NCBI RefSeq assembly: GCF_035594765.1
Contig: NC_085841.1
Location: forward strand, 161,247,574 to 161,311,573
From: Anolis carolinensis
Lineage: Eukaryota
Reading direction: 5' to 3'
Length of the DNA: 64,000 bases
Shown here in pieces: positions 23,516 through 63,215 of the stretch (its first letter is position 1; every line of letters begins with the position of its first letter). Made by a program: the position numbers and the translations under genes. The notes under the pieces are model-generated. The model searched no databases and was not told the origin of the DNA. It worked only from the letters and a program-made list of their open reading frames with translations.

Positions 23516-23950
23516 CTAATTTTGGTCTTCAATTATATATGAGAGATCTAGCAGCAGACTGGCTGTCTCCACTGCAACCTGCAGGCCATTCTTTTTTGCG
23601 GCAAAACAGTCCAGAATCAGATTGTTTGTGGAGGTTACAGAAGACTCATGAACACAACTTTGTGGGGGGAAAGGACTGGCACAGCACTGCAGCATCCTCC
23701 AATGGAGGCCTTGTTCTTTATTGCAAAGACCACATCCACACTTCCAAATTAAGTCTGACCAATCAGATCTGCTGGGGACATCAGGCGGAACAGACCAAAA
23801 ACATTTCACATCTGTGCAAATGTTGCCTCCGTCATGGTCTAAGGAGCAAGCTACAGACTCTAGTGAAGAGCAAAAGGCATCAGCCACCATCCTGAACTCT
23901 GCCCAAGAACAGGATAGATCTTCCAAGATACTTCCTTCCACAGTAGAGGT
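23516..23950 (-). CDS. MKKS: MKKS/BBS6 chaperonin-like protein, last coding exon (435 nt incl. stop)
   Basis: Acceptor ttttgttctag|ACC; encodes TSTVEGSILED...AFCSSLESVACSLDHDGG...CGCGL...GLQVAVETASLLLDLSYIIEDQN*, matching the vertebrate MKKS C-terminus. Confidence 0.96.
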   Translation of the reverse strand, partial: TSTVEGSILEDLSCSWAEFRMVADAFCSSLESVACSLDHDGGNICTDVKCFWSVPPDVPSRSDWSDLIWKCGCGLCNKEQGLHWRMLQCCASPFPPQSCVHESSVTSTNNLILDCFAAKKNGLQVAVETASLLLDLSYIIEDQN

Positions 23951-24190
23951 CTAGAACAAAAAAGTGGGGAAAAATTATTAAAGTGTTACTCATTGCTCTA
24001 GCAAATTATGACAAATAGGCATCAGAGCTGTGTGCATGTCCTATTATATTCAATGGATTATAGTGTGGGCAAGAATAAGCACATCCACAGAGATTCCAAT
24101 CTTTCTTTCTCCTTTACTCATGACTGCCTTGTCACTCTTCATACTCCACTATAATTGTCTTGGACTTCTCCCAGCACCATTGTTCACCAG

Positions 24191-24391
24191 NNNNNNNNNN
24201 NNNNNNNNNNNNNNNNNNNNNNNNNNNNNNNNNNNNNNNNNNNNNNNNNNNNNNNNNNNNNNNNNNNNNNNNNNNNNNNNNNNNNNNNNNNNNNNNNNNN
24301 NNNNNNNNNNNNNNNNNNNNNNNNNNNNNNNNNNNNNNNNNNNNNNNNNNNNNNNNNNNNNNNNNNNNNNNNNNNNNNNNNNNNNNNNNNN
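24191..24391. other. Assembly gap (201 N) in the last MKKS intron
   Basis: Run of N. Confidence 0.99.
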
Positions 24392-24494
24392 AGTGTCAGA
24401 TTGACACATATTAGTTTAGTAAACTATACTTTGAGGCTTCAGATTGTGAATGGATTCTAAACTCACATATCCTTTTGTAAATAAGTTCTAAATA

Positions 24495-25035
24495 TTATTA
24501 TTTATTTACTTTTCTCCTGCTTTTCTCCCACAAATGGGACTCAAAGTGGAGTACAAAATAGAAAACAACTACATAATACAAAAACCATCATCCCACAACC
24601 CACAACCCACCATAAAACAACACATTGCATAGACCCAAATTACATAAATATAAATAAGCATAAAAATAACACATTATTATTTTAAAACTCTAAACCTCAG
24701 ACCAAGGAGGTTGTTCTACCACATTAAATCATTCATCTAAATAGTTCAGAGCTCCATATCTTTGGCCATATAAGTCTTGAGTCTTGTCTGACTGAAATGG
24801 CTCCTATTGTACGTTATTGGGGAAGGCCAGCTTCCATAAAAAAGGTTTTCACTTGGGAGCAATAGGCCAATAATGAGGGGAATGATTGCACCTCTTTGGG
24901 GCGGGAGTCCCAGAGCCACAATGCCACCACTGAAAAGGCCCTCTCCCTCGTTCTCACCAACCATACTTGGGACGGTAGTGGGACTGAGAGGAGGGCCTCT
25001 CCTGATGATATCAGGACTCGTGCAGGTTGATATTT
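24495..25035 (-). mobile_element. Degenerate L2-like LINE 3' fragment
   Basis: TTTA tail followed by a conserved 3'-end motif (CCTGCTTTTCTCCCAC..GGGACTCAAAGTGG); shared with other fragments in the window. Boundaries approximate. Confidence 0.5.
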
Positions 25036-25231
25036 TAGGTTTTACAAAATGCACGCTGGGGGAGGGGGATGTTGTATGACTTTTCACCTCAACATAGCTT
25101 GGTACCTTAGCATGTCAACATGCAACCTTGTCCTGTGCAATACTTCTGGCTCGTAGATTTTGGGGAAAACAAAGATGATGGCCAGAGATGCTGTATTTGG
25201 TTTTCCTCTCCCTATTTTTGTGGTTGAGATA

Positions 25232-25279
<48 letters not shown>
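25232..25279. repeat. (AAT)n microsatellite
   Basis: About 16 perfect units; source of the poly-N/poly-I ORFs in the track. Confidence 0.95.
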
Positions 25280-25280
<1 letters not shown>

Positions 25281-25469
25281 TTATTTGTATTCCAGCCTAT
25301 TTCCCCGAGGGGACTCAAGGCGGATTCCAACATAAACAACACAACAATGAGGGAGGGATATGCAGTTTTCAGAACTGCAAAGGAGGTGACCCATGAACAT
25401 TGCATGGGAGGAGCATTGTTAAAAAAAACCAAGGGGCTGAACGACTTCCTTCTACATGCCCTTCTTTTT

Positions 25470-25850
25470 ATAGAATCATAGAGTTGGAAGAAAGCTCGTG
25501 GGCCATCCAGTCTAACCCCCTGCCAAGGAGCAGGAAATCACATTCAAAGCACCCCTGACAGGTGGCCATCCAGCTTCTGTTTAAAAGCCTCCAAAGAAGG
25601 GGCCTCCACCACAGCCCGGGGGAGAGAGTTCCATTGTTGAACAGCTCTCACAGTTAGGAAGTTCTTCCTAATGTTCAGGTGGAATCTCCTTTCCTGTAGT
25701 TTGAAGCTGTTGTTCTGCATCCTAGTCTCCAAGGCAGCAGAAAACAAGCCTGCTCCCTCTTCCTTAGGACATCCTTTCACATATTTCTACATTGGTATCA
25801 TGTCTCCTCTCAGCCTTTTTTTTGTGGGTTAAACATACCCAGCTCTTTAA
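25470..25850 (-). mobile_element. CR1 LINE 3' fragment (continues at 26228-26340)
   Basis: ORF 25544-25780 ..FKLQERRFHLNIRKNFLTVRAVQQWNSLPRAVVEAPSLEAFKQKLDGHL is a CR1 ORF2 C-terminus; ATTCTAT-type tail. Confidence 0.9.
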
Positions 25851-25910
<60 letters not shown>

Positions 25911-26534
25911 TATCCCCGAAAGGACTCAGGACTCACATGGGGAAACTCAACGACATAGTTAAAATGAACATATTAGTATTCACATAACAGCTTCATAAAA
26001 CAATATAAAACAAACAACAATATAACACAGTATAAAATAGCAACAACAACCAGTGACCTAAAATAGTAAACAGTTTCTGGGCTCGGTAGGCGGGGTAGTA
26101 AGAATAATTTATGAGGCTGATGGATAAAGTGCAATGTCAGAAGGGAAAGATTAGGGATAGGGGGCGATATAAGTGGAGCACTATAACTCTGGGTAGGAAA
26201 CAGTAATAGGATGCAAGGACTAGAATTCAACTGCTCCACATAGGGCTTGATCATTTGAGTTGCCCTCCTCTGGGCACCTTCCAGCTTGTCAACATCACCC
26301 TTCAACTGCGGTGCCCAGAACTGGACACAGTACTCTAGGTATGGTTTTTTGCTTTATTTCACAGCCTATCCAGGATACTTTGTCTTCCAAATGCACAAAA
26401 ACCCTGAATCAAAGACATCTGCAAAACATGCACAAGATCAGTAAGGTGTTTCACTACTTCTCATAATCCCTTATAAACTGGCTGGACTTAAGTACATTAA
26501 ACAGCTTTAAATACCCTCCCAAAGCTCTACATAC

Positions 26535-26645
26535 CATGTGCCTGATATATGAGGACAAATGCATTTCTGTATAGCCGCCACCTAGCAATACCCAGGGATC
26601 ACGGAGGGTTAACTGCAAAACATGTTCTGCTGTTTGACAGGCAAG
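26535..26645 (-). CDS. MKKS: MKKS third coding exon (111 nt)
   Basis: ttttctatag|CTT...ATG|gtatgt; encodes [37 protein letters not shown] with the chaperonin GGG motif; phase 0/0. Not in the ORF track. Confidence 0.95.
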
Positions 26646-27572
26646 CTATAGAAAATAAACCACACACTCTGTTATTAAACAATCAAGCAAACATAGAAAT
26701 GAAGGAAACAACCACTAAAGAAATGAAGAGACTCTCTAGGTATCTATTTTTGGTGTTTGTAAAGTATTCTTCTCATACAGCACCATTTTCTAAAAACAAT
26801 AATTTTACACTTTAACCATGGAGGTCTGCACAGTGTATAGAGGGCTTATCCTGTTTTATCCACACAACAACCATATGAGGTGATTCTAACAGCAAAGTCG
26901 CCTCTGGCTTACAGCCATAACATACATTAGCTTTAAGACTGAGTAAGGACTTGAACCCAACTATTCTGGATCCATGTCCTTTATCAGGAATGTAAAGGCA
27001 AAGTCAGGGATGGGGAAGATCACAGCAAGAATAGATGCAAAGGGGTCAGAGCCCCTCAGGCATATATTCCAGGACCCCATGCCATGAATGGTAACTGTGC
27101 AACCTGAAGGAGACACAGCCTCACCCCCTGTGCCAGCTTGATGATAAAACTGTTGCTGACAGCTTCTCCAGAGCTCTCTCTTGATCCCTAAAGCAGAGTG
27201 TCTTCCAATAATGTAATGTCTTAATCCACATGTGGGCAAGGACATAACCCCTGTCTGCTCTTTCCATGGTCTCTGGAGCTTTAGTGCTCTTTACCTACTT
27301 TTCCTTGCCTCAGCTGATCAGACATTGGCAGCAGCAGGAAAAAGAATGCTGTATCTCTGCTTCTAATACCAGCAGTGAAACAGCCTTCTCTGCTTGGGGG
27401 GCAAGTAGCATGAAGTTAAATCCTCTTGCTCCATCTCAGTGATTCCCAATGCAAGGACAACTATTTGCTCACTAATAATAATAATGTTGGTGAAACAACA
27501 ATTTGAATCAGGATTATTGGAAGTGCAAGCTAACAACAGAGGAGAAATAGCAAATCTTTGCACCAAGGTTAC

Positions 27573-28254
27573 TATTTGTCTCATTTGTGTTTGTTTCGTA
27601 TCGTCCATTGGGATGGCACAAAACAGAAAGACCTCCAACGAACAAAAACTGACTTGAAATGAAAGGAAGGCGGGAGCTGATTGGCTCCAAGCCTGCTTTT
27701 CGGATCGACCAGCTGTAGGCCCTGCGGGGCCCAGGTGTGTAGGCCCAAAGCCTGCACTCATAAACCCAAAGCTCCTGGGCCTACGGGTGCAGGCTTTGAC
27801 CTCGGCACCTGGGCCTCACAGGACTTACGGCCGAGTGCCGAGTAAGGAGTGATCCTTACTCGGCACTTGACTGTAAGTCCTGCGAGGCCTGGCTAGGCAC
27901 AACCCAAAGCCTGAACCCATAGGCCCGGGCATCAGGGCCTATGGGTGCAGGCATTGGGCTTACACGCACAGGCCTGGTGGGTGGGGGAGGGGGAGGTTGG
28001 GGTGGCTGAGTCGTCCTGCACCTCCCCCCCCCCCTTTGCCCGGCTCCCACCGCCCTTTGCCCGTATTTGAGTGGCTCTGGCTTCTGCTGTGTCCTTGGCC
28101 GACACCTCCCCCCCCCTCTGAAAAACAAGAAAAAACATGAAACAAAACCAATGTCTGACCTCCCAATTTCGGGAGGTCAGATGAAAACGGATCAGGGTCT
28201 CAACGAAAGCCGGGACATGAAACAGAACAAGGTAAGTCCCGAAACCCATTTCTA
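27573..28254. mobile_element. GC-rich non-autonomous DNA element (probably hAT) with central hairpin
   Basis: Right end CCCATTTCTA; 8-bp flanks AAGGTTAC (27565-27572) vs AAAGTTAC (28255-28262); left TIR appears deleted; 37-bp stem at 27812-27889. Confidence 0.55.
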
Positions 28255-28348
28255 AAAGTTACTAGGAAGAAGGTGAAGTTAAAATCTCCTTCTTTTAATC
28301 TGTTGCTAATGATACTCCCCGCTCGAATCTTAGACCACCAGTGTCAGA

Positions 28349-28505
28349 GGCCCCTTCCACACTGCCATATAATCCAGATTATGAAAGCAGATAATGTGCC
28401 TAGGCCACATTATCTGCTTGGAACTGGATTATATGAGTCTATACTGCCAAAAAATCCAGTTCAAAGCAGATATTCTGGAATTTATATGGCAGTGTAGAAG
28501 CCGCC
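28349..28505. mobile_element. PIF/Harbinger-type MITE
   Basis: GGCCCCTTCCACACTGCCATATAA...TTATATGGCAGTGTAGAAG palindromic structure. Confidence 0.7.
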
Positions 28506-28919
28506 ACAGTCAAGATATAGGGTAGGCTTGGCTTATTTTGTTAAGTGCTTCCTCATGTAGCAAAATATGACTGTTTGTGATTTTCCTCAGCCGTGTATCT
28601 TGCATTATGTATACTTTGGTTTATGACTTGCCACTGAGAGGTAAACCTGATCTTAATTTCTAAGTCTAATTGCTGAGGCACGTATCCTTGAGGAAATCCC
28701 ACTGTCCCAGCCGAGACTGGATAATCCATGGGGATACATCTTTTATAATATTGAGTTTGAAACTAAATTGCTTGATAAAGGTATCTCCTTTCTATCAATG
28801 TAAGCAGAGATGCGCTAGAGAGAGTTCTCCAAAAGACTCAACTTTTAATTACATTACATGACCCTTCAAAAGTTTATCCGAAAGTAGGTATTTCAGTAGG
28901 TAATTGTAAAGATACTGAC

Positions 28920-29095
28920 CTTCAATTCATCCCACGCTGTTTCATTCCTATTACACAGCATCACACTGCAGACAACTGGGTCATTAGGAATCAGATGAAA
29001 GAACCATTTTGAAGCAATAGACAGAGTTTGCAAATCCTTCAAATGGCCACAGCAAGCAGGAGACAGAAACTGTAGCGAAGGTATCGGCTGAGCAC
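28920..29095 (-). CDS. MKKS: MKKS second coding exon (176 nt)
   Basis: gaacag|GT...AAG|gtcagt; encodes (G)AQPIPSLQFLSPACCGHLKDLQTLSIASKWFFHLIPNDPVVCSVMLCNRNETAWDELK; phase 1/0, consistent with both neighbours. Not in the ORF track. Confidence 0.95.
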
Positions 29096-32000
29096 CTGTT
29101 CAAAAGAGGAAAAAATAATGATACACACTATCTTAGAAAAAGAAAAGCCAAATATTCTGTAGTGTAGCATAACACTGAATTCAGTTAGAAATTAAAATGC
29201 TTCAAGGTCAAATCCAGGAGTGGAAATCATGTGCCCTCCAGATGTTCCTGGACTGCAACTTTCAACATTCCTTGCTACTGTTTATGCTGACTAGGGCTGC
29301 TGGGACTTGCAGTCTAGCTATATCTGGAGTGATCCATGATATACACTCCTCGATCAATGAATTAGTAACACTATGCTTCCAGATGTTACCAGACAGCAGT
29401 TTCCATCATCTCTCACAATTGGCAATACTGACTAGTTTATGAAAGTTTCAGTTCAACTACATTGACTCCACTTTCCTTGACATACTATTTTCAACCATTC
29501 TGAAAGTCAAAGGAACAGCAGTTTTGGGAATGCTGGGCCTTGTGGTCAGCTCATTTGTGAAACAATAACACCAGGATAGAATATTCTGGTTTCTTTCTTG
29601 CCCATTTGATATTTTTATACCTTTAAAATGTAATCATGTTTTAATATAATAAATTGTTTAATTGTGCTCTAAATTTTGTAATAGGATTTTTTTTACCTTA
29701 TCCTGTTTCAGTCTTTGTTTTGACTTGGAATTTTCCTTGGATCCATGCAATGAAATAATCAAAACAAAATAAATAGTTTGCCTAAAGAATAATTAGCTTC
29801 CTGCCATAGGTTAGAAGGCTACTGGTTTAGATGACTTTAAAAGAGATTAGCCAATAGTTACAACAAAGTCTCTTTTTTCTTCTTTACAGAGTCTGTAAAC
29901 GATTGTCAGATTTGTCAGTATTTTTTAAATAAAATTGTCAGTGTATCTAACTTAGCCAAATCCATTAATTTGTCTATTTATTCTACAATATTTGGAGTTT
30001 TATTGTTTTCTTAGTATGTTGCATACACCAATCTGATTATATGGCACATTACTCTCTATTGGTCTTATTTTCCAAATCTCACATACTTAAGAGAAACAAC
30101 TCAGGTCTAAATGTTATTTCTGCTTTCAAAAGCTTTTGCATCATTGTACTGAATGTTAACCAAAAATGTTGGTTAACCGGTCCACCAGAAATGGTAGAAG
30201 GACCCAACATGTTTATTACTCTTCCAACACTTTTTATTCAAAGGGGCACACTGTAACTATAGGTTCTGATATACAGAGAAGAAAATATTTTCTTATGCAT
30301 AAGAAAAAATAGAAAATATAAAAGTTTAAAGAGGAGGAATGTTTTATCTAAATTAGCACACCAGTCAAAGAAGAGTGGGATGTCAATTTTAATGAGTGGT
30401 AGGGATAGGAATGATGCATTATTTATTTATTTGTTTTTAAAATTTATTGTTTCATATAATTTATATACTGAGTGAAATATTAAAATTTATTATTAAAAAA
30501 CAGATTAGCCAAATCTATGATCAGATGTATTAGCTATCAGAGATAAGCATAACCTTATTATTTGGAGTCAACTTATAGGGAATGGCATTTTTTTTCCACT
30601 TCCTGCTTATGGATGCTCTAGAACAGCAAAGGGAAAACTCCAGCCTGGGATCAGATCTAGTCCTTGGAGCTCCTCTTGCCTTGGTCTCCCATGCCCATTG
30701 ACCCTTTAATGTTGAACAAAAGAGAAGCAATCAGTTCTTGAGAGAATAACAGGATCAAAATGCTTTCCCTTGATGTGGCAATTTCCCAAAACCCTTCTCA
30801 TGAAAAGAAAGGCAGAGGAAAGTGATACAGCTTTGGGGCATCTGGGGAATGTGTCATGAAACACTCCTTCCGGAAAGATCAGTTCTCACTTCACTTCTCT
30901 AGAGAAGCATGTAGAGTATCTGTATTGGCTGATGTGGGGTAGCAGAAGTGTTTTTGTCTCTGCCTACTGCTGGAGTGCATCCCCAATATGTTTCTTTGAT
31001 GTCAATATGGCCCTCAAGGGCAGAATAGCTTCCCATCCCATCTTGGAACAATCTAGTTAGTCACTGTGGACACTGGACTAGGATAAACTTTTTAGATACA
31101 ACAGGGATCTCAATGCTATTTCATATTGAACCATTTATACAGAGTCAATCTTTTAAAAAATAAGTTGGGACTTGTTTTGGGGACTGTAGGTATCTATGAA
31201 CCAAAGAAGACCAAACCAATCAAGGGCTGAAAGTAATTTATCCCATCCTCCTGAGGTGGCATTCCCATTATGATGCTGTTTGAATGGGGTTCTCTAGCAA
31301 TTTCCCCCCTAAAATTAATGGAAATGATGGAGCAACATGTTTTCCCCAATAGCTCCCTCCACTACATTGAATTCTTTTTTGATCAGGCCACATGAGACAA
31401 GAAAATTGACAAAGAAGGAAGGGTTGGACTTCTTCAGGATCTATGAAATTGCCATATTAGAAAGCCTGGGTTATTGTGTCTTTTAATGAGATCTCAGGTA
31501 GCGGAGCTGGAAAAAAATCCCAGACTGCTTACAAAGTGACATTTGAATCACGTTACAGATTAACCAATTTCCGTTAATCTACAACATACAATCTAAGATT
31601 GTAATCATAAGCACATATACTTAATGCCACTAGAAGCAAATTACTTTTGTGGAAATACAAGAGCAATTTAGAAGGAAGGGGGGGATCTAAATGGGCTAAC
31701 TACTGCTATTCATTGAAGTTAATAAACTGGCAGCCTTCTCTAATCTTAGACACTTTTGCCTGGGGACCAGTCATTTCAATTCAATTCTTGAATGAAGTTG
31801 AATTTCTATTTTAGTAGAACAGATTTCACAGGTTCATATGGAATGGATACGCTTGCTGTTAAGTTTGATCATAGCACTGGGACAGTTGAAAGGGTGTCAC
31901 TAGAAACTAGAAAGAAACAAAGTAAAAGGATATCAAAACGAAGAATAAGAAACATATAGATTCTTAAGTGGCAGCAACTGGAATATTTGCAGTGGGATTC

Positions 32001-32175
32001 ATTTAAGGAAAGGATAGGTGGCATATCTGATTCTCCCATGAATATTTCTTCATTTTTACAACAGGCTTTAAGATAACTTTCCTGAGACTCACAGATCTAT
32101 GCCAGTAGCACATAAACTCAATCTTCCTCGGAAATAACCTAATGGAGTTACTAAGGAGGAATGTGTGTTCGTTAC

Positions 32176-33166
32176 CTGTAATTTCTTTCAGAGGCTCCAT
32201 CAATGGTAGTCCAACTCTTTCTATTGCCACAATGTGGTTCTCCTTCAGGTATTGTTGCAAAGCCGGATGGATGACTTTCTGACACACAAAAACACCAACA
32301 CCATCCTTTACTATTTGCTTACCTACATTAAGCAACTGAGCTAAGACTACTGCTTCTAAATAAACTCCGTGTGGGATGACAATGACTCCTTCTCCATTGT
32401 CAGATAAGTCTCCAGACAGAGACATACTGAAAAGTACCATCTTGATCATGCCTGAAGTATCTCTTTTGATTGGAGGTGTATTTCTTAGGTCCACTTCTGG
32501 CACTTCTATCAGAAGTCCAGGATATACAGCAGAATCCAAAACTTGCTTGTTCTTTACAGGGATATAAAGACACTTTCCTAGAGTCATTTGAGTATTGATG
32601 TTGTGTGGAATTGTAAATAGAAAAGCCTCTAAAACCAAAATGCTGATGTGATTGGCTTCCATTCTGCTAAGCCTGCAGGCAGGTTTGCTGGTTATTATAC
32701 TACGGACCAGATCCAGGGGGATCTTGGAACTGCTAAAATCCACCTGCATTCTACAACCGCACGTTTCAGACGCAAGATAGTCAATGCATAGGCTCAAAAG
32801 GTGTTGGCTGATTTTAATGAAAGTGCAAGGGGTGATGTTCAGGCCTTGACATTTTTCAAGCAGGCTGCAGCAAAAGATGGCCATAAACAAGCCGCAGTCA
32901 CTGAAGCGTGCGAGATGGTTCTGCACAGAGGCTGTCAGAAGCTTTAACACCGGATGAGTGACTGAAAGGCCACCGAGCAAAGCTGAAGCCTGCGACGTGG
33001 TGCGCACATATCCACCCACACCGTTGTGCAGTTGCTTAAGCCTCCCTGTGGGGCCATAGCAGGACCTCACCATTTTAGCAAAAACTGACAGAGCATGGCA
33101 AAGGGTCTCCTTAGCTAAAGGTTCGCTGGTACATAAGGAAGGCTTTTTGAGATCAACACGAGACAT
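32176..33166 (-). CDS. MKKS: MKKS first coding exon (991 coding nt; exon begins at acceptor 33539)
   Basis: True start MSRVDLKKPSLCTSEPL at 33166; SCYGPTGRLKQL, FSDCGLF and CQKVIHP motifs of the group II chaperonin-like BBS6; donor ACAG|gtaac at 32176/32175. Four exons total 1713 nt = 570 aa + stop. Confidence 0.97.
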
Positions 33167-33368
33167 CTTTCCAGATAAAATCCCAGTCAAGACTTAGATG
33201 CATCTCATGTCTATAAACTGCTTTTTAATGAATGATATACACACAAGCGAGAACAAGGCTGCTGCATTCTTTTGTGGTCAAGGCAAAGCGTATGGACACA
33301 GCCGTTTTTATCCGATATTTGACAAAATCGCTATATGTGTGGTCTGTATGATGTTGGCAGAAATGGGG

Positions 33369-33521
33369 TCATTCATCAAGACCTTTTGATTTAATGTCCA
33401 ACCCTGATTTAGCAGAGGACTTTGCAGCTCTTTGTACAAGGTAGGTCCCCAAATGAACACCAACAAAGGTGAGTCCAGCCACAAGTAGCCAGTTCTTCCT
33501 AATCCAGCTGATTTTCTTCAT
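33369..33521 (-). CDS. MKKS upstream ORF 2 microprotein (uMKKS2-like), 50 aa
   Basis: MKKISWIRKNWLLVAGLTFVGVHLGTYLVQRAAKSSAKSGLDIKSKGLDE*, translated by hand. ATG is 18 nt inside the exon (acceptor ttaattgcag|33539), -3A context. Closely matches the human MKKS uORF2 peptide as I recall it. Confidence 0.9.
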   Translation of the reverse strand: MKKISWIRKNWLLVAGLTFVGVHLGTYLVQRAAKSSAKSGLDIKSKGLDE

Positions 33522-36500
33522 TGTTCAAGTGCAATCTATCTGCAATTAAAAAAAAAAATCATGAAATTACAGTTATAGTTTTTCTTAAAAAAAACCTGTG
33601 GGTAAATTGAACAGCCTGCTCTTCTACATATGGCATCTCCACATAGTGGACATTCAAAATGGTTGTCAGTTTTCTTTCCATACAAAATTCTTTATGCTAT
33701 TATGTCAGTTCACATCTTTACACAACAATACACACCAAACCGTCGCATCTTTTAGACTGTCATTCAGTTTGGGCTACCTGAAAATTGTTTCAGGAAATGC
33801 ATGTAAAATGACCTGGTATGCAATAACTTTAGAAGAGATGTAAATCAAGGGTGGGAAGCTTCACATTTTTTAAAATTAGGATTCTGCCAAAATGGTCATG
33901 TGAATCATGGGATAACATTGGATTAAAAGGGTCAAATCCTTCTAGTTGTAGTAATAGAAGAAATAAGGCTGACTAGCATAGACTTTAATGGCTTTTTGAA
34001 GAACATCACATTTAGGAAAAACAGGATTTGACATTCTCCTTGTTTTACTCTTTCTTGGTCTATTAGTTCTTATGCTCCCATGTTCTTAAAATATGGGAAT
34101 TTTTTTTTGGAAGTGAGAGGACTCAAAAGTCTGCAATCAAAATAAAACAAACATATGCAAAATGCAATCTTCAACTCCCACTATAGCATAGTCACAGAAC
34201 CAATACGAAATGGAATACTACACTATGAGATAAAAAATGTGATATCTTTGGTTATTGCTGAGTGACAATACCCATGAGTCCTCATCACTGGCAATGCCAG
34301 TCAGATGGCAAATGGAGCCCAACAACATCTGGAGGGCTACATTTTCCCATACTATACATTTTAATCTTAACTTCAATGTTAACCACACAGATACATCTGG
34401 TGAGAAAATGAGAAAGGAACTTGGTGGTTGCCCCTAGGCTTTGGAATTATCTTCCCAGAGAACACTCTCTATTTTAATTCCACAGACAGGTGAAAATAAT
34501 ATGTTAAAAATATCCATTTTATTGTATTTTATGATTATGTGTTTTAATTGTGTTATGCCCCATCTCGAACCATGAGGGAAAGTGGGTAACAAAAAAAAAG
34601 TATTATTATTGTTATTATTATTATTCAACTGACCCTTGAGGACTGAATGTACAAGGCCCATGCCACCTAAACAATGTGCTGGATTTTCTATCTGCTTTTT
34701 TGTTGTGCGATTTAAAAACATAAATCATTTTAAAATGATCGCCTTTTAATTTCTGTATTTTGTGAATTTTAACTATGTGATTTTATCAATTGCCAGCTGC
34801 CTTGAATACCAAACTGGGTTAAAAGTGGGACAAATTATTATTATAATTTATTTATTGTTATTTAATAATAAATAACAGTAAGTACTACTAATATTAGTAA
34901 TTGTACTTATACAGCAATTCAACCAAAATCAATTGAAACATTAAAAGTTCTAAGATATCTCAAAATAAGTGTTTTTAATCGTTTGAAACATAATTCCATT
35001 ATAACAAGACATTTAACAGCAATACATTATCACGTTAACAGCTAATTTTCACTTTCATTCCAAACAACAACTCAAACCTAACTTATAGCCTAGACATTTG
35101 ATAGTTCTCTATTTTCTTCCAGCCTCAGGCTGACTAAATATGTAATAACATCCACAAAAGAACACGGTCAATAGGATTCCATATGTGGATAATGAATATC
35201 ATGTGCACCTGTGAGGCCATCTGTCTATGACTATCCAAATACAGGCACTCCTCGAGTTACAAACATCTAACTTTCAAATGACTCACAGTTAAGAACAGGG
35301 GTGTGACAACAGGAAGTGAGAAAAATCTATCCCTAAGAAGGTAAACTAATTCCTGAAGTAATTATTATCATGGGGAAAAGGTGTCTCCGGTGGCTTTATC
35401 ACCAATCAATGTCTCCACAACAAGCCAATTTTTTCAAAATCCAATTATCAGAGGGACAGAGAGTGAAGTGAAATCTTCTGAATGGAGGCAAACACCACAG
35501 GGGTGTTACCCCTTCCCTATGCTATCTAAAACATGCATGTATGTGTCTGTTTATGCGCGCGCGCACACACACACACACAGACACACAAACACACACACGA
35601 AAGACAATATTTATGAGATAATAGATCAGGCTCTTTTTCCCCCTCAATTTATGCTGACATGCCCAAGTTTAATCTTCCAGATGAGCTGAAAGGGCTGCAA
35701 GCTTGTAGTTAAATGGGGAAAAAACCATTGGTAACTATCCCTCTATGCTCAAACAGACTAGGGGAAGGGGGGGGGCACCTCCACCTTTGACAATAATCTC
35801 TAAAGCTTGAACCTAAGAAAGCTAAGAAAAATGTATTTTGGAAAGGCAACAAGTATGAGCACCATTTTAATAGCTTTAGTGTGTGTTGGTATGAATAATG
35901 CAGTTAAGGCTTTATTTACAGCTTCACAGTGAAAGCAGATGGCAAACTACAGCTCCACTGCATCTTTTTCATTGCAGATGTGAAGCCGTGCCTGAATCTA
36001 GTTTTGTCACAAGTATGAAAACATACAGGTGAAAATGGGTAAAGCCTATGAATTGAAAACTATATTTCAATCATAAAAGCAAACGCTGAAATGTATCTGT
36101 ATCTGTGTGCACATGGGTATGTGTGCTTAAAATTTGATAATGCCTTAACTTAAAGGCAGCCAGCTCCCATGTTTGAATGTACATCAGCAACTGAAAAAGG
36201 AAAAGCTAGCAAACTGGCTGATTCACATTTGGAAGGGATGTAATTGCCCACTTTCTCTTTAACAGTTCCTTATCCCAATACATTTTTCTAATTAAAGATG
36301 AAAAAATGGAAACCAGGATTGTTAAGAGCACAGAAGTTATACTTGTAGCCTGATCCAAGCTAACAGTTTTGCCTCACTATAGCAAACATCAAAAACAGAA
36401 TGACCACATGTACTCATGTACAAGTCTAAAATTGTTAGTCAACCCCAAAAAAGTTTCCTTTTTTATGGTCCAATGGAAGTAGTATACCTTACCCCTTATC

Positions 36501-37791
36501 AAAAAAGGAACAACTTCCTTCCATGATGGCAAAAGACAAAAGCTGAGTCTGTCTTGGGAAAACTTAAAAGAAGAATCAACTCATTCTATTGTCTCTGCCT
36601 TTATGAATGACTGGATGAGGAAATGACAGTTGAGGGCCATTCCCCTTTCTGTGGAATGACCCTCAACTTATCCATGGGTCAGAACAAAATCCATAATTTT
36701 GGTCCCAGATCTTGCCCTCGACTTATATATAAGGTTGATGTATATACAAGTATATATAGAACTCAGTTTTCAGGACACTTCAAAATTTGTTTCATGTAAC
36801 AAGGGTAGGCAAAGTGGAATCCAAAAGAGGTGGCCCATCTATTAAATGGCATCCCTTCCATTTAATATTTTCAAAAAAAGAAAGTGGACGGCTGGCCATG
36901 AATGACTTTCTTTTTAATTTTTTAGTAGTCTGCATAGCCCCGAGTCAAAAACTGGGCCCTTAGACCCACTGAAGTTGCCCCTCCTGCTGCAAAATGTGCC
37001 CTTTATTACTGATAATGGACTAGCTAATTTTGCCTACTGTGTTCACAGCAGGATTCCTAATTTGAAGTCAGCCACTATACGGCATGGCACCAGCTCTCAA
37101 AGGCTTTGTTATGCTGCTGCAGGTTTTGGTACTGCAAGCAAAATCATCCAAGAGTGGGAAGCACAGCAGAAAAGTCTCCCAACTTGTCAATTAAATGTCC
37201 TGACTATTCATTTATTTACACCATGGCTAGACAGTGGAACCCACCAATTTACTGGCCATACTTCAGCCCTGCTGCCTGGTCACTACAATGAGAAGATATT
37301 TTTTTGTTTTGCTTTTTAAAACAAGGTTTAAGGTGTTGTGGTTCCAGGAAGCAGAATTATCCTTAAAAACTAGTCGCTCCTCTTGTCTGCCTTGTTCATA
37401 TCTCAAAAAAGCAGTGAAGTATTAGAAAAACAAAAGAATTTCAAATACTGGAAAAAAGAATGGCTTGGGGAGAGTTAAACAGACTAACTTATTAAAAGAA
37501 AGCTCTGTATCTAAAAATATGGTAACCTTTTACAGAGTGTGTAAAGTAAGAAAAAGGAGACATTGTAACTACTGGTTTTGATATAAAAAAATAAAATATT
37601 TTCCTTATTATTAGGAAAGTAAATATAACAGATGCGTTTTAGAAAGGAGGAATATTGTGTATAAGTTAGCATGCTGCAGCCAGAGAAGAGCAGAAAATAA
37701 GCTGAAATGAATGGGGCAGATAGAAAAGATGTACTGTTGATTGTGTGGTTTGTTGTGTGTGTGTGTATACATACATACATATACATATATA

Positions 37792-37792
<1 letters not shown>

Positions 37793-37835
<43 letters not shown>
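37793..37835. repeat. (CA)n microsatellite
   Basis: About 21 units; source of the CVCVCV ORFs in the track. Confidence 0.95.
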
Positions 37836-37844
<9 letters not shown>

Positions 37845-38286
37845 GTCGGATGTCTATTTTTTGTAACATAAGTATTAAGTGTGATACTAATATTTATTTT
37901 AAAAAATTAAATAAAAAAGTAGTGATTCTGCTGTCTCCCAAGCTGTAAATTTGGCAGCCAGGACGATAGAAGCCTCAGTGGGAGTTTCAATTATGATCAA
38001 AGGGCTGGATGTGTGCTGTCTGTGATTCATGCAGATTTACTCCCACAAAATAAAAATATAACTATAAGCCTGTTTTAGAAAGGCATAATCACCTGGAAGA
38101 TTGGTAGGATCTGATGCAAAAGAATGTCATACATGGCTAACTGGGGCAAGGGGAAACAGAGACGGTCTGCCATTATATGATGCTGGGGATAAAAAGAAAG
38201 ATTGGTCTCGGGTTTAGCATTATAACAAAGGTCTTTTACATTCATATCACTTCTCTCATTTTGTTCTTGCTGCAGCAAGAACTTAC

Positions 38287-38525
38287 CTCTCAGTTACTCT
38301 GCAGCACTGTGTGGTTATTTTCCTTTATTTTGTTTCTCTGCTTGCAGCACGTATGTCACGATTCCAGGCTCGGGGACAAAGTCATCTGTCTTGGGTTGGA
38401 AAACAGGATGGGACTTCATGTTATACCAGCCCAAGTGCACCAAGACAAGGCTCGTTCCCATAACAATAATAACTCTGTAGTTCTTCCAAATTGTTTTAAG
38501 GCCCATTGCGTGTGTTGGCCTCTAC
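38287..38525 (-). other. MKKS: MKKS leader exon carrying uORF1 (239 nt)
   Basis: Acceptor cttctttacatag|38525 and consensus donor GAG|gtaagt at 38287/38286 bracket the 63-aa ORF. Confidence 0.85.
38315..38506 (-). CDS. MKKS upstream ORF 1 microprotein (uMKKS1-like), 63 aa
   Basis: MGLKTIWKNYRVIIVMGTSLVLVHLGWYNMKSHPVFQPKTDDFVPEPGIVTYVLQAEKQNKGK*; strong Kozak (GCAATGG); single hydrophobic segment; matches the human MKKS uORF1 peptide (63 aa) as I recall it. Confidence 0.9.
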   Translation of the reverse strand: MGLKTIWKNYRVIIVMGTSLVLVHLGWYNMKSHPVFQPKTDDFVPEPGIVTYVLQAEKQNKGK

Positions 38526-38951
38526 CTATGTAAAGAAGTTGAGAGTCTTGAATACGGTCTACTGAACATAGTTTAAGCATACTGCCTCTTAACTGTACAG
38601 TAATAATAAAAAAAAACTCAGAATACTTAAATAACGCCTGAATATTTGCATTTTGGCAGCCTCATCCTAACAATATATTTTCAAAAGCACAAACAATCAT
38701 GACCTGCCATAGTATTTTATGAATGCAGCTTTGATTACCCATCAGCAGGAAGAATTACTGAATGGCAATTTATACCTCTTCAAGCCAAACTGTCATCACT
38801 ATCTAGCATGGTTATAGTAATATTAGGGAATTGAGAGATACCAACCTTTGATTCATGTCTTCCTATTATCTCTTCAAAAAATAAAAAATAGGTAAGAATA
38901 CAAAAGCACAAAAGAATCCTTCAGAGGGCTTTCACTGAAGTGGTCAGTCTG

Positions 38952-39182
38952 TAGAATCATAGAACAATAGAGTTGGAAGAGACCTCATGGGTCATCCAGT
39001 CCAACCCCCTTCCAAGAAGCAGGAAAATTGCATTCAAAGCACCCCGATAATGGCCATCCAGCCTCTGCTTAAAAGCCTCCAAAGAAGGAGCCTCCGCCAC
39101 TCCGGGGGAGAGTTCCACTGCCGAACAGCCCTCACAGTGAGGAAGTTCTTCCTGATGTTCAGGTGGAATCTCCTTTCCTGTA
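38952..39182 (-). mobile_element. CR1 LINE 3' fragment
   Basis: Same sequence family as 25470-25850 (AEAPSLEAFKQRLDGH). Confidence 0.88.
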
Positions 39183-40269
39183 TCTGGGTTATACATCTTG
39201 AGGTTATAGGTCTTCCATATAAAAATCAAAACTAAACAAAATCAGAATATCTCTACACATGAGGATAATAATATATCAAGGAAGAATCGCCTAACTGCAA
39301 ACTATACTGTAGTTAGGATTAATTGCTCTGTTAACTGGCAAGCCTCCTTCGCTTTTATAGTATACACATATAGACTGATTTTAAACTCTTTTTTCTGCAA
39401 TTTCTATTCAAAAGCATCTTTCTGTAGCTTGGGCAAAATCTAGTGCACAAATACATTCTGAATACAGCTTGTTGTTTGGTTTTCTAAAACAACAATATTT
39501 TTATCTTCAGCCTACATTCCTATGGCTACTCAAGGGTAGCAAGTACCGTTGATAGCTATATAGAACTGCATTGCAGACAAGTACTTCACCTTAAATGATC
39601 TTTGCTTTCCATGCAAACCAATTTGTTAACCCGACTACAATTGCAAAGATGAACCTGTGAACCTACCAAATACAATGCAGTAGTTTTCTGTTCTGTGTAC
39701 AAGAAAGAAATTGGGGCGAGGAGCGAGATCTGACTTTAGAGATCGAGCACTGTGAGAAAACAGGCCAAGCAAGCATGTAAAATACTCTTCCTACAGTGAA
39801 GGCATTTTAAGTTCAAAGGGGGAGTCAGGTTCATGCACCTGTCCTTGGTTATATAAAGGCTCCACTTAGTTGTAAGCCATTCTGTTGCAGCTGCTACAGC
39901 AAGACAATTACTTTGCCGCTCATGTGTACGTATGAATTATGCAACAGTAGAAAAAAATCAAATAATTCAAGTACTTAATTCTGGGTTTTTTTTCTTAGTG
40001 ACTTTAATAAATCCATCCTGGTTGCGTAGACGAAATGGACACTAGCAGAAGTGGAGGGAAATCTTCATGATTCCTCATCCTCTGTGTAGCCATAAAAATA
40101 TTGCTGGGCTGAGGAAATGAGGGCAGAGAGCTTCCAGGTCAGTTATGGAAGCTGTGTTAGAGTTATGTAAGGAAATATGAGCCGCATCTTCTCCTTCCTG
40201 CTATATGAGTCTCCAGAAGACCAAGAGGCCCTTCTGTCCACAAAAGAGAAGGTATAAATCCAACTGTTT

Positions 40270-40911: not shown

Positions 40912-41172
40912 ATTTAGGAAGCAACCAGGCTTTGAATCTGCAAGGCCATTAAATGCTAATCAAGGTGATTAATTACAACATTCATACTTGTCTCCAACAG
41001 ACAAGAGTTCTTTCTCCCACCCAGGACCTTCCACAGATATTTTAACCCCACTTTCCTAGTTATCCAACAAACCTCACAACCTCTGAGGATGTCTGCCATA
41101 GATGTGGGCGAAACGTCAGGAGAGAATGCTTCTAGAACATGGCCATACAGCCCGGAAAACTCACAGCAACCC
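40912..41172 (+). mobile_element. Penelope pLTR fragment
   Basis: CTCTGAGGATGTCTGCCATAGATGTGGGCGAAACGTCAGGAG motif shared with the other Penelope copies. Confidence 0.8.
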
Positions 41173-41379
41173 GTTTTTTTTTTAATGGATCGCACATCCC
41201 TAGTAGTTAAAGTCGTGTCGAGCCGTATTAATCCTACAGTGTATTCACCCCATGACTCTGGTTCAAACCCCCACACGGCCATGGAAACCCAGTCGGTGAC
41301 CTTGGACAAGTCACATACTTTCAGCCCAGAAGGAAAGCAGATTCACTCATCCGAACCAATATTACCAAGAAGGCCCCTT

Positions 41380-41830
41380 TAAGACGGTCGCCATGACTCA
41401 GAAATGGCTGGAAGGCAACAAACCTCTTGTTCTTCCGAAGCCGGCGCAGCGGCCTCTCTCCCTCGCCTCGGCTTTCCCCGGAAACAGAAGCAAAGGCGCG
41501 GGGACTCCACTTCCCAGGGTGCATCGGGAGCACCAAGGCTTTTGACTAACGAGTCACGTTTCCCGGCGCATGGTGGGAAATGGATTTCAAGTCATGCTGA
41601 AGCTAGCTTTCGAAGTAGGTTACTGCTAGAACTGGAAGATAATTGCCCAGAAGCTGCAAACGTAAACCGCGATTGGCTGCCGTCTGTCACGTGACGTAGA
41701 TGTACGAGAAGTGTCCTTGATTCAAATCCTTTGTCGTCATTTTGGAATCGGGCGGAAGACACTGACTCTTCCCTTGGAAAGACAGCGCAGCGAGCGGCCT
41801 CCCCTTTGAGTGGGGCGGGTCAGAGGAGGG
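41380..41830. promoter_or_regulatory. CpG-rich bidirectional promoter of MKKS (-) and SLX4IP (+)
   Basis: The only non-TE CpG-dense stretch between the divergent genes. Two opposed ZNF143/SBS-like sites (41504-41528, 41563-41587), CCGGAA ETS core near 41478, reverse CCAAT 41672-41676, palindromic E-box GTCACGTGAC 41686-41695, GC box 41812-41819. Candidate MKKS exon-1 donor GAG|gtttgt at 41424/41423. Confidence 0.75.
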
Positions 41831-41979
41831 CTCTCCATACCGAATTTCCTATTCCTGTCTTTTTTTTTTTTTGAAGCTTTGGCGCTCTTTTGGTCATCTG
41901 GATTAAAGAGATAGCGGCTCACATGGAAAGCACGGATCCTGTCCATCCAAGGTTTTCGCTTTTTTTTTTTTTTACAAAA

Positions 41980-61973: not shown

Positions 61974-63215
61974 CAATGTGTTGTCGAAGGCTTTCATGGC
62001 CGGGATCACAGGGTTGTTGTATGTTTTCCGGGCTGTATGGCCATGTTCTAGAAGTATTCTCTCCTGACATTTCACCCACATCTATGGCAGGCATCCTCAG
62101 AGGTTGTGAGGTATGGAGAAACTAAGCAAGGAATTTTTATATATATCTGTGAGAAGTCCAGGGTGAGGGAAGAACTCTTGTCAGTTGGAGGCCAGCTTAA
62201 ATGTTGCAGATAATCACCCTAATTTGCATTGAATGGCTACATCTACTAGCTACTTTCTGCCTGGGGGCATTCTTTGTTAACTGCCCCTAGTTCCCATGTC
62301 TCAGAGTATTGCTTCTTATTTACTGTTCTGATTTTTGAGTTTTTTAATACTGGTAGCCAGATTTTGTTCATTTTCATGGTTTCCTCCTTTCTGTTGAAGT
62401 TGTCCACATGTTTGTGAATTTCAATGGCTTCTCTGTGTAGTCTGACATGATAGTTGTTGGAGTGGTCAAGCATTTCTGTGTTCTCAAATAATATACTGTG
62501 TCCAGGTTGGTTCATCAGGTGCTCTGCTATGGCTGATTTCTCTGGTTGAGTTAGTCTGCAGTGCCTTTCATGTTCTTTGACTCGTGTTTGGGCGCTGCGT
62601 TTGGTGGTCTCTATGTAGACTTGTCCACAGCTGCATGGTATACGGTAGACTCCTGGTGAGGTGAGAGGATCCCTCTTGTCCTTCGCTGACCGTAGCATTT
62701 GTTGGATTTTCTTTGTGGGTCTGTAGATAGTTTGTAGGTTGTGCTTCTTCATCAGTTTGCCTATGCGGTCAGTGGTTCCCTTGATGTATGGTAAGAACAC
62801 CTTCCCTCTGGGTGGATCTTTGTCTTGACTCTCATGGCTTGTTCTTGGCCTTACAGCTCTTCTGATGCCTGTGGTGGAGTATCCATTGGCCTGTAGAGCC
62901 CAGTTTAGGTGGTTTAGTTCACCTTGGAGGAGGTGAGGTTCACTAATGACAGACCGTGCACAAAGAATCTGTGAACCTAGTAGATGTAGCCATTCAATGC
63001 AAATTAGGGTGATTATCTGCAACATTTATGCTGGACCCCAACTGACAAGAGTTCTTCCCTCACCCTGAACTTCCCACAGATATATATAAACATTCCTTGC
63101 TTAGTTTCTCCATATCTCACAACTTCTGAGGATGCCTGCCATAGATGTGGGCGAAACGTCAGGAGAGAATACTTCTAGAACATGGCCATACAGCCCGGAA
63201 AACATACAGCAATCT
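61974..63215 (-). mobile_element. 5'-truncated Penelope-like element with GIY-YIG endonuclease region and inverted pLTR
   Basis: LPYIKGTTDRIG...GVYRIPCSCGQVYIETTKR...RVKEH...SAIAEH...REAIEI (RT thumb/linker plus GIY-YIG); inverted pLTR at about 62978-63213; 12-bp flanking repeat TTTTATGAGGTT (61962-61973, 63216-63227). Confidence 0.93.

What the first reader, a model, noticed from the sequence alone, without database searches (positions are those of the whole stretch)
33166..38525. Tricistronic-type MKKS mRNA: two intact membrane microprotein ORFs precede the chaperonin ORF
Seen: splicing 38525-38287 to 33539 gives 19 nt, uORF1 (63 aa), 46 nt, uORF2 (50 aa), 202 nt, then the MKKS ATG. Both uORFs have a basic N-terminus, one hydrophobic helix of about 20 aa and a polar tail. 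uORF1 has the best Kozak context of the three starts (GCAATGG vs ACAATGA and AAGATGT). Known (from memory): human MKKS has uORF peptides of these same lengths, reported as mitochondrial and as repressing MKKS translation. The architecture is therefore not new, but it is usually unannotated outside mammals. Inference: protein-level conservation in a lizard means these are real genes in an operon-like transcript linking mitochondrial microproteins to a ciliary BBSome assembly chaperonin.
Basis: partly seen in the sequence, partly recalled or inferred. Interest (0 to 1): 0.88.

Follow-up and report, generated by a model that had tools for sequence, protein, structure and literature searches.

The report
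Two mitochondrial microproteins upstream of MKKS
The lizard gene for a cilia-related chaperonin (MKKS/BBS6) carries two small, real membrane-protein genes in front of it on the same transcript; this is already known from humans and annotated across vertebrates, but the pairing turns out to be older than vertebrates and the two small proteins look like ancient duplicates.

Summary
All coordinates and spacers are right, and the 38287->33539 splice appears in contigs of four public runs from four studies. Both ORFs are under purifying selection (dN/dS 0.14-0.43, like MKKS itself). They are the orthologues of human uMKKS1/uMKKS2 (LOC128706665/LOC128706666), so the system is known. 'Usually unannotated outside mammals' is wrong: NCBI names homologues in lizards, snakes, turtles, crocodilians, birds, frogs and lamprey. 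The model is also incomplete: 38525 is an acceptor, exon 1 lies at about 41.4 kb in two forms, and 10 AUGs precede MKKS. Not found in the papers searched: (i) uORF1 also sits before MKKS in amphioxus and three unidentified invertebrates, two of them with a second small ORF; (ii) uORF1 and uORF2 are probable paralogues (hhalign 90.6%; the scan noted this idea before, on this same stretch, not on other DNA); (iii) a poly(A) hexamer 47-63 nt before the MKKS AUG recurs in four tetrapods. Best reading: independent mitochondrial microprotein genes sharing one transcription unit and throttling MKKS; a functional mitochondria-cilium link is unproven.

The parts
41424..41453 (-). Exon 1, short form (donor after 41424; 5' end approximate); CpG-rich promoter region about 41.1-41.9 kb
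   Evidence: Loose end of run X4 maps to 41426-41453 with 1 mismatch; GT donor and CpG obs/exp 0.78-0.88
41366..41451 (-). Exon 1, long form (donor after 41366); adds a strong-context 10-codon uORF starting at 41394 that stops 16 nt before uORF1
   Evidence: Loose end of run X11 maps to 41367-41396 without mismatch; translation
38287..38525 (-). Exon 2 (239 nt), carries uORF1
   Evidence: Splice signals; covered by contigs in 4 runs
38315..38506 (-). uORF1, 63 aa single-pass microprotein; orthologue of uMKKS1 / micro-MKKS63 / LOC128706665
   Evidence: homologues from amphioxus to mammals; dN/dS 0.14-0.43; helix 11-32
33540..38286 (-). Intron 2, 4,747 nt, GT-AG; donor 28 nt after the uORF1 stop
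   Evidence: Joint in 4 runs; stop-to-donor 18-28 nt in 8 loci including amphioxus
32176..33539 (-). Exon 3: uORF2, 202-nt spacer and the first MKKS coding part
33369..33521 (-). uORF2, 50 aa single-pass microprotein; orthologue of uMKKS2 / LOC128706666; probable paralogue of uORF1
   Evidence: dN/dS 0.18-0.30
33224..33229 (-). Candidate poly(A) hexamer (ATTAAA), 63 nt before the MKKS AUG
   Evidence: AATAAA at -47 in alligator and turtle, -53/-47 in frog, none in the fish; use not shown
33153..33376 (-). Five short non-conserved uORFs (AUGs at 33376, 33372, 33267, 33208, 33203); the last overlaps the MKKS start out of frame
23516..33166 (-). MKKS/BBS6 chaperonin-like coding region (exons about 33166-32176, 29095-28920, from 26645, 23950-23516)
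   Evidence: Pfam Cpn60_TCP1 E 7e-41, far below all CCT cut-offs; exon blocks by homology

Best explanation
This is the lizard copy of the known MKKS leader system. uORF1 and uORF2 are two genuine genes for small single-pass mitochondrial membrane proteins that share a promoter and a transcript with MKKS. Shown here: the ORFs, the splice, purifying selection, conserved order from fish to amniotes, uORF1 before MKKS in amphioxus and three other invertebrates, sequence kinship of uORF1 and uORF2. Taken from human work: both peptides go to mitochondria, the uORFs repress MKKS translation, poly(A) sites in the leader make short uORF-only RNAs, uORF1 is the main product of the locus, its loss lowers respiration, and it is predicted to bind the complex IV subunit MT-CO3. 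Inferred for the lizard: scanning ribosomes start mostly at the strong uORF1 AUG; uORF2 is made by leaky scanning or re-initiation; few ribosomes pass 10 AUGs to reach MKKS, so the chaperonin is made at low dose. Cleavage at the hexamer before the MKKS AUG would give a short RNA for the two microproteins only; since the uORF1 stop is always under 30 nt from the next junction and uORF2 would be in the last exon, that RNA escapes nonsense-mediated decay, while the long RNA is exposed to it. The most likely job of uORF1 is helping assemble or stabilise complex IV (about 50%); uORF2 is a diverged duplicate with a related job. The tie to MKKS is one of shared transcription and dose control, not a shown common pathway.
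For: anatomy, splice; orthology, annotation; same order in alligator, turtle, frog, fish; invertebrate linkage; dN/dS; invariant V15, H24, W27 inside the membrane helix, variable tail; a homologue beside a mitochondrial carrier gene, no MKKS; hexamer, stop-to-donor distance; papers PMC11837024, PMC13577902, PMC7066179, 10.1101/2024.10.01.615885 supplement.
Against: No lizard ribosome profiling, mass spectrometry, localisation or 3'-end data; contigs cannot show RNA ends or single molecules. The hexamer has a 5-13% chance per species by shuffling and is absent in the fish. [quoted passage not shown] No functional data on uORF2 beyond localisation were found.
Confidence: 0.75

Rival explanations
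1. A true functional operon: selection has kept the microproteins in front of MKKS for over 550 million years because ciliogenesis (BBSome assembly) and respiratory-chain assembly must be coupled, with stress or energy state switching ribosomes or poly(A) choice between the two outputs.
For: Linkage kept in vertebrates, amphioxus and three invertebrates, with two upstream ORFs in two invertebrates; intron position after uORF1 kept; the human uORF represses in a sequence-dependent way (PMC7530721).
Against: Human uORF1 and MKKS RNA correlate poorly (r = 0.15) and have different co-expression networks; a uORF1 homologue lies beside a mitochondrial carrier gene instead; none was seen within 3 kb upstream of MKKS in termite-gut contigs; tight linkage alone resists breakage.
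Confidence: 0.16
2. The ORFs are mainly cis-acting regulators: the peptide sequence is conserved because the nascent chain stalls the ribosome and limits MKKS; the mitochondrial location is incidental.
For: Frameshifting the human MKKS uORF relieves repression; uATG mutation raises reporter output.
Against: Conservation is in the N-terminal membrane helix, not the C-terminus that stalling peptides usually use; homologue away from MKKS; abundant stable peptide and respiration defect on knock-out, although that knock-out could also de-repress MKKS.
Confidence: 0.08
3. Chance ORFs or a wrong splice model.
For: Neither peptide matches Pfam.
Against: Splice seen in 4 studies; dN/dS far below 1; intact frames in over 200 homologues.
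Confidence: 0.01

Closest known systems
Human MKKS leader with uMKKS1 (63 aa, Q9HB66, LOC128706665, micro-MKKS63) and uMKKS2 (50 aa, V9GZ13, LOC128706666); Akimoto et al. 2013 as reviewed in PMC11837024; PMC13577902
   Same: Same two peptides, same lengths and order, same downstream gene; NCBI names the reptile, bird and amphibian hits as their homologues.
   Different: Only the species. Lizard-specific details: two exon-1 donors, a 10-codon extra uORF in one form, five short uORFs before MKKS. Human uMKKS0 could not be matched (original paper not held).
Drosophila sloth1-sloth2 (SMIM4 / BRAWNIN-UQCC6 type), PMC9681215
   Same: Two similar, probably paralogous mitochondrial microproteins on one transcript, acting on a respiratory complex.
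   Different: No sequence kinship shown (no Pfam hit; ESM feature scores only 0.83-0.85); no third long ORF there; complex III rather than a predicted complex IV link.
Other uORF-encoded mitochondrial microproteins on bicistronic mRNAs: MIEF1 uORF, SLC35A4 uORF (PMC7530721, PMC7066179)
   Same: Conserved uORF is itself a mitochondrial protein and represses the main ORF.
   Different: One uORF, not two; unrelated sequences; in MKKS the main ORF is not mitochondrial.

Membership tests
MKKS uORF system (uMKKS1/uMKKS2) | uORF1 homologous to uMKKS1 / LOC128706665 | tested here: met
   Hits named 'LOC128706665 homolog' at 63-78% identity; a primate hit of the profile search clusters with Q9HB66
MKKS uORF system (uMKKS1/uMKKS2) | uORF2 homologous to uMKKS2 / LOC128706666 | tested here: met
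   Hits named 'LOC128706666 homolog' at 62-90% identity
MKKS uORF system (uMKKS1/uMKKS2) | Lengths 63 and 50 aa, in that order, upstream of MKKS in a spliced leader | tested here: met
   same in alligator, turtle, frog, fish
MKKS uORF system (uMKKS1/uMKKS2) | Protein-level conservation | tested here: met
   dN/dS 0.14-0.43, bootstrap upper bounds of pN/pS all below 0.9
MKKS uORF system (uMKKS1/uMKKS2) | Alternative polyadenylation inside the leader giving uORF-only RNAs | tested here: inconclusive
   Hexamer at -63/-47/-47/-53 in four tetrapods, none in the fish; contigs cannot show ends
MKKS uORF system (uMKKS1/uMKKS2) | Translation and mitochondrial localisation of both peptides | not testable with these tools
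   Known for human only; basic N-terminus and one membrane helix fit
MKKS uORF system (uMKKS1/uMKKS2) | Repression of MKKS translation by the uORFs | not testable with these tools
   Known for human; 10 upstream AUGs make it likely
MKKS/BBS6 chaperonin-like protein | Group II chaperonin fold, too diverged for any CCT subunit, about 570 aa | tested here: met
   Pfam PF00118; at most 45 bits against CCT/thermosome cut-offs of 400-800; orthologues of 563-572 aa at the same place
True polycistronic mRNA (all ORFs translated from one molecule) | One RNA molecule carries and yields all three proteins | tested here: inconclusive
   One contig spans both uORFs and MKKS in each run, but a contig does not show a single molecule; no long reads or Ribo-seq
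Sloth1/Sloth2 (SMIM4, UQCC6) complex III assembly peptides | Sequence homology to those families | tested here: not met
   No Pfam match for 23 uORF1 homologues or uORF2; ESM feature scores under 0.9
uORF1-uORF2 paralogue pair | Similarity beyond shared composition | tested here: met
   hhalign probability 90.6%, E 1.3e-6 over 29 columns; 0-3 of 1000 segment-preserving shuffles reach the score for each of 13 uORF2 sequences; the reverse test is clear only for some uORF1 sequences, best for lamprey, hagfish and one invertebrate

The most novel reading that the evidence does not exclude
The microprotein-MKKS transcript is an ancient animal unit, older than vertebrates: an ancestral uORF1 (a candidate complex IV assembly factor) sat in front of MKKS, a second small membrane ORF arose by duplication (once early, or twice independently in vertebrates and in an invertebrate lineage), and the arrangement has been kept because a poly(A)/translation switch couples respiratory-chain assembly to the dose of the BBSome chaperonin. 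The old linkage is shown here; the functional coupling is not.
Probability: 0.2. Interest if true: 0.65.

Novelty: already known. Interest (0 to 1): 0.32.

Why it matters
As stated, the finding repeats a system described in 2013, revisited in 2020-2026 and annotated by NCBI across vertebrates. Its remaining value is evolutionary and practical: invertebrate homologues extend the uORF1 family (invariant V15, H24, W27 point to the binding face to mutate), show that the linkage to MKKS predates vertebrates, and suggest uORF2 is a duplicate. This gives testable handles on a microprotein now tied to respiration and Alzheimer's disease (PMC13577902), and warns that MKKS/BBS6 knock-outs or knock-downs that remove the leader or the whole transcript also remove two mitochondrial proteins (inference).

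Tried and rejected
Pfam, NCBIfam and PDB sequence searches gave no family or structure for either peptide; a weak uORF2 match to a protist cytochrome c oxidase subunit (E about 1) is not evidence. The uORF1 model (pTM 0.33) was not used for a fold search, since one helix matches by chance. The second ORF of invertebrate loci L009/L015 is conserved between them (36%, E 3e-13) but its kinship to vertebrate uORF2 is not significant (hhalign 8-15%; 41 of 500 shuffles). The similar acceptor-to-ATG distances of the two uORF exons in the lizard (19 and 18 nt) are not conserved (38-45 nt for uORF2 in frog and alligator), so they are no argument for exon duplication. The five short spacer uORFs differ in place and length among species: not genes. 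A metagenome scan with one invertebrate MKKS found nothing. The species of L008, L009 and L013-L023 could not be named; L009 comes from a red-alga metatranscriptome and is taken as an animal living on the alga (inference). The MKKS tree does not resolve invertebrate branches. An hhalign shuffle script timed out. Akimoto 2013 is not held and is cited through a review. No SLX4IP exon was found in window 42-64 kb by tblastx.
Full report
Observation. The finding lies on the minus strand. Every coordinate holds: acceptor before 38525, 19 nt, uORF1 38506-38315 (63 aa), donor after 38287, acceptor before 33539, uORF2 33521-33369 (50 aa; 46 nt after uORF1 in the spliced RNA), 202 nt, chaperonin ATG at 33166. 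Each peptide has a basic N-terminus, one hydrophobic stretch (residues 12-30 and 11-29) and a polar tail; AlphaFold with 23 homologues gives a short helix 3-9 and a confident helix 11-32 for uORF1. The long ORF is a Cpn60_TCP1 protein far below every CCT cut-off, as expected for MKKS/BBS6.

Transcript evidence. Contigs of four runs from four studies join 38287 to 33539 over a canonical 4,747-nt intron, with exon-only depth. The runs are RNA by guess, but the joint and the empty intron make that reading safe. Contigs show neither ends nor single molecules. Loose ends show that 38525 is an internal acceptor: exon 1 lies in a CpG-rich stretch near 41.4 kb and uses donors after 41424 or 41366. The longer form adds a strong-context 10-codon uORF (41394) ending 16 nt before uORF1. 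In one run the contig runs on unspliced past 38700. Ten AUGs precede MKKS in exons 2-3; five lie from the end of uORF2 onward and one overlaps the MKKS start out of frame. These short ORFs are not conserved.

Conservation and annotation. uORF1 has over 200 homologues from fish and a chimaera to birds, and reaches lamprey, hagfish, amphioxus and unnamed invertebrates. uORF2 has homologues across amniotes, frog and fish. Many non-mammalian hits are already named 'LOC128706665 homolog' or 'LOC128706666 homolog', and all three ORFs are called genes in alligator, turtle, frog and a mormyrid fish in the same order. The collection also holds both window peptides letter for letter. So the claim that the ORFs are usually unannotated outside mammals fails. 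Pairwise dN/dS against the lizard is 0.14-0.43 for uORF1 and 0.18-0.30 for uORF2 (saturated against the fish), against 0.19-0.24 for the MKKS exon. Invariant residues (V15, H24, W27) lie in the membrane helix, the tail is free.

What is known. Human uMKKS1 (63 aa) and uMKKS2 (50 aa) are translated, sit in mitochondrial membrane fractions, repress MKKS translation, and the leader has poly(A) signals (Akimoto 2013, through PMC11837024; PMC7066179). Repression depends partly on peptide sequence (PMC7530721). uMKKS1 is the dominant protein of the locus in brain, is poorly correlated with MKKS RNA (r = 0.15), and its knock-out lowers oxygen consumption (PMC13577902). A structure-prediction screen pairs it with MT-CO3 of complex IV (10.1101/2024.10.01.615885), whereas proximity labelling points to the outer-membrane surface; the sub-mitochondrial site is open.

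Beyond the literature searched. First, the linkage is older than vertebrates. Amphioxus has a 75-aa uORF1 homologue, an intron starting 19 nt after its stop, then MKKS, with no second ORF. A transcript from a red-alga metatranscriptome, taken as an epibiont animal, reads 61-aa uORF1 homologue, 28 nt, 62-aa ORF, 27 nt, 571-aa MKKS; that protein is MKKS and not a CCT subunit (E 2e-41 to the lizard exon, 1e-57 to amphioxus, at best 9e-13 to CCT). A genomic contig of a distant invertebrate (L015) starts in the tail of a uORF1 homologue, then has a 51-aa ORF 36% identical to the 62-aa one on its own exon, then MKKS; L016 has a weaker uORF1-like tail just before MKKS. The link is not universal: L008 has the homologue beside a mitochondrial carrier gene, and termite-gut contigs show none within 3 kb of MKKS. 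Second, uORF1 and uORF2 are probably paralogues: hhalign 90.6%, E 1.3e-6, and shuffles that keep the basic, hydrophobic and polar segments almost never reach the score; convergence of short membrane peptides is not fully excluded (I put paralogy at about 75%). The invertebrate second ORF cannot be tied to uORF2 with significance. An earlier scan note on this same stretch had proposed the paralogy; I had begun testing it before. Third, a canonical poly(A) hexamer lies 47-63 nt before the MKKS AUG in lizard, alligator, turtle and frog, not in the fish (chance 5-13% each, and the species are related), and the uORF1 stop is 18-28 nt from the next donor in all eight loci. A paper search for MKKS with bicistronic and invertebrate gave nothing; subscription papers are not covered.

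Mechanism. Most ribosomes start at uORF1 (strong context here and in the four other vertebrates read), some reach uORF2, few reach MKKS. Cleavage before the MKKS AUG would yield a short RNA for the microproteins only, immune to nonsense-mediated decay under the 50-nt rule (established knowledge), while the long RNA has downstream junctions and needs re-initiation. The result is much microprotein and little chaperonin, as measured in human. These steps are inferred for the lizard. The microproteins are best seen as independent genes (75%); a selected mitochondria-cilium coupling (16%) or a mainly cis-regulatory role (8%) remain possible.

Verdict. Real, well supported and already known; interest 0.32, raised a little by the pre-vertebrate linkage and the probable duplication.

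Conduct. A human protein record (P0211) came back in a cluster list; only its name was read, and it was not aligned or searched. Unnamed mammal-like JGI/ENA hits (P0045, P0050, P0053) were left out of alignments.

Noticed in passing
L009:71-2216 and L015:1-1970: Two distant unidentified invertebrates have two small ORFs before MKKS; their second ORFs (62 and 51 aa) are 36% identical, match no Pfam family or PDB chain, and are not significantly like vertebrate uORF2.
   Followed up: partly
L008:159-326: A uORF1 homologue lies upstream of a mitochondrial carrier (SLC25-type) gene, with no MKKS on the 5-kb contig; the ESM Atlas also lists unnamed arthropod clusters at 0.92-0.93 to uORF1.
   Followed up: partly
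   Followed up: no
window 38526-38700 and beyond: In run X6 the contig continues unspliced upstream of exon 2 for about 470 nt: retained intron 1 or another start; that stretch holds 13 ATGs and a candidate acceptor at 38949.
   Followed up: no
L004:12430-12560: In the turtle the 3' end of uORF2 is repeated twice in tandem (about 59 nt) behind its stop, and uORF2 is 49 aa.
   Followed up: no
L005:10155-12841: In the frog the annotation extends uORF2 to 83 aa by starting inside the uORF1 exon in another frame and splicing across the intron.
   Followed up: no
L006:1-8357; window 41100-41900: In the fish an SLX4IP-family gene (PF15744) is head to head with this unit; the lizard CpG-rich promoter may be bidirectional, but no SLX4IP exon was found in 42-64 kb.
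   Followed up: partly
window 38324-38329: An AATAAA lies within the last codons of uORF1, also in Elgaria; it could end an RNA right after the stop, but is missing in alligator.
   Followed up: no
window 62246-63025 (-): A 259-aa ORF that looks like the C-terminal part of a Penelope-like retroelement with a GIY-YIG endonuclease (from memory, not tested).
   Followed up: no
window 25544-25780 and 38957-39229 (-): Fragments that look like CR1-type LINE reverse-transcriptase ends (from memory; one matches a repeat in the turtle locus).
   Followed up: no
proteins P0198-P0200: The cluster of the 571-aa invertebrate MKKS has an unrelated-looking 42-aa representative; probably a clustering artefact.
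   Followed up: no
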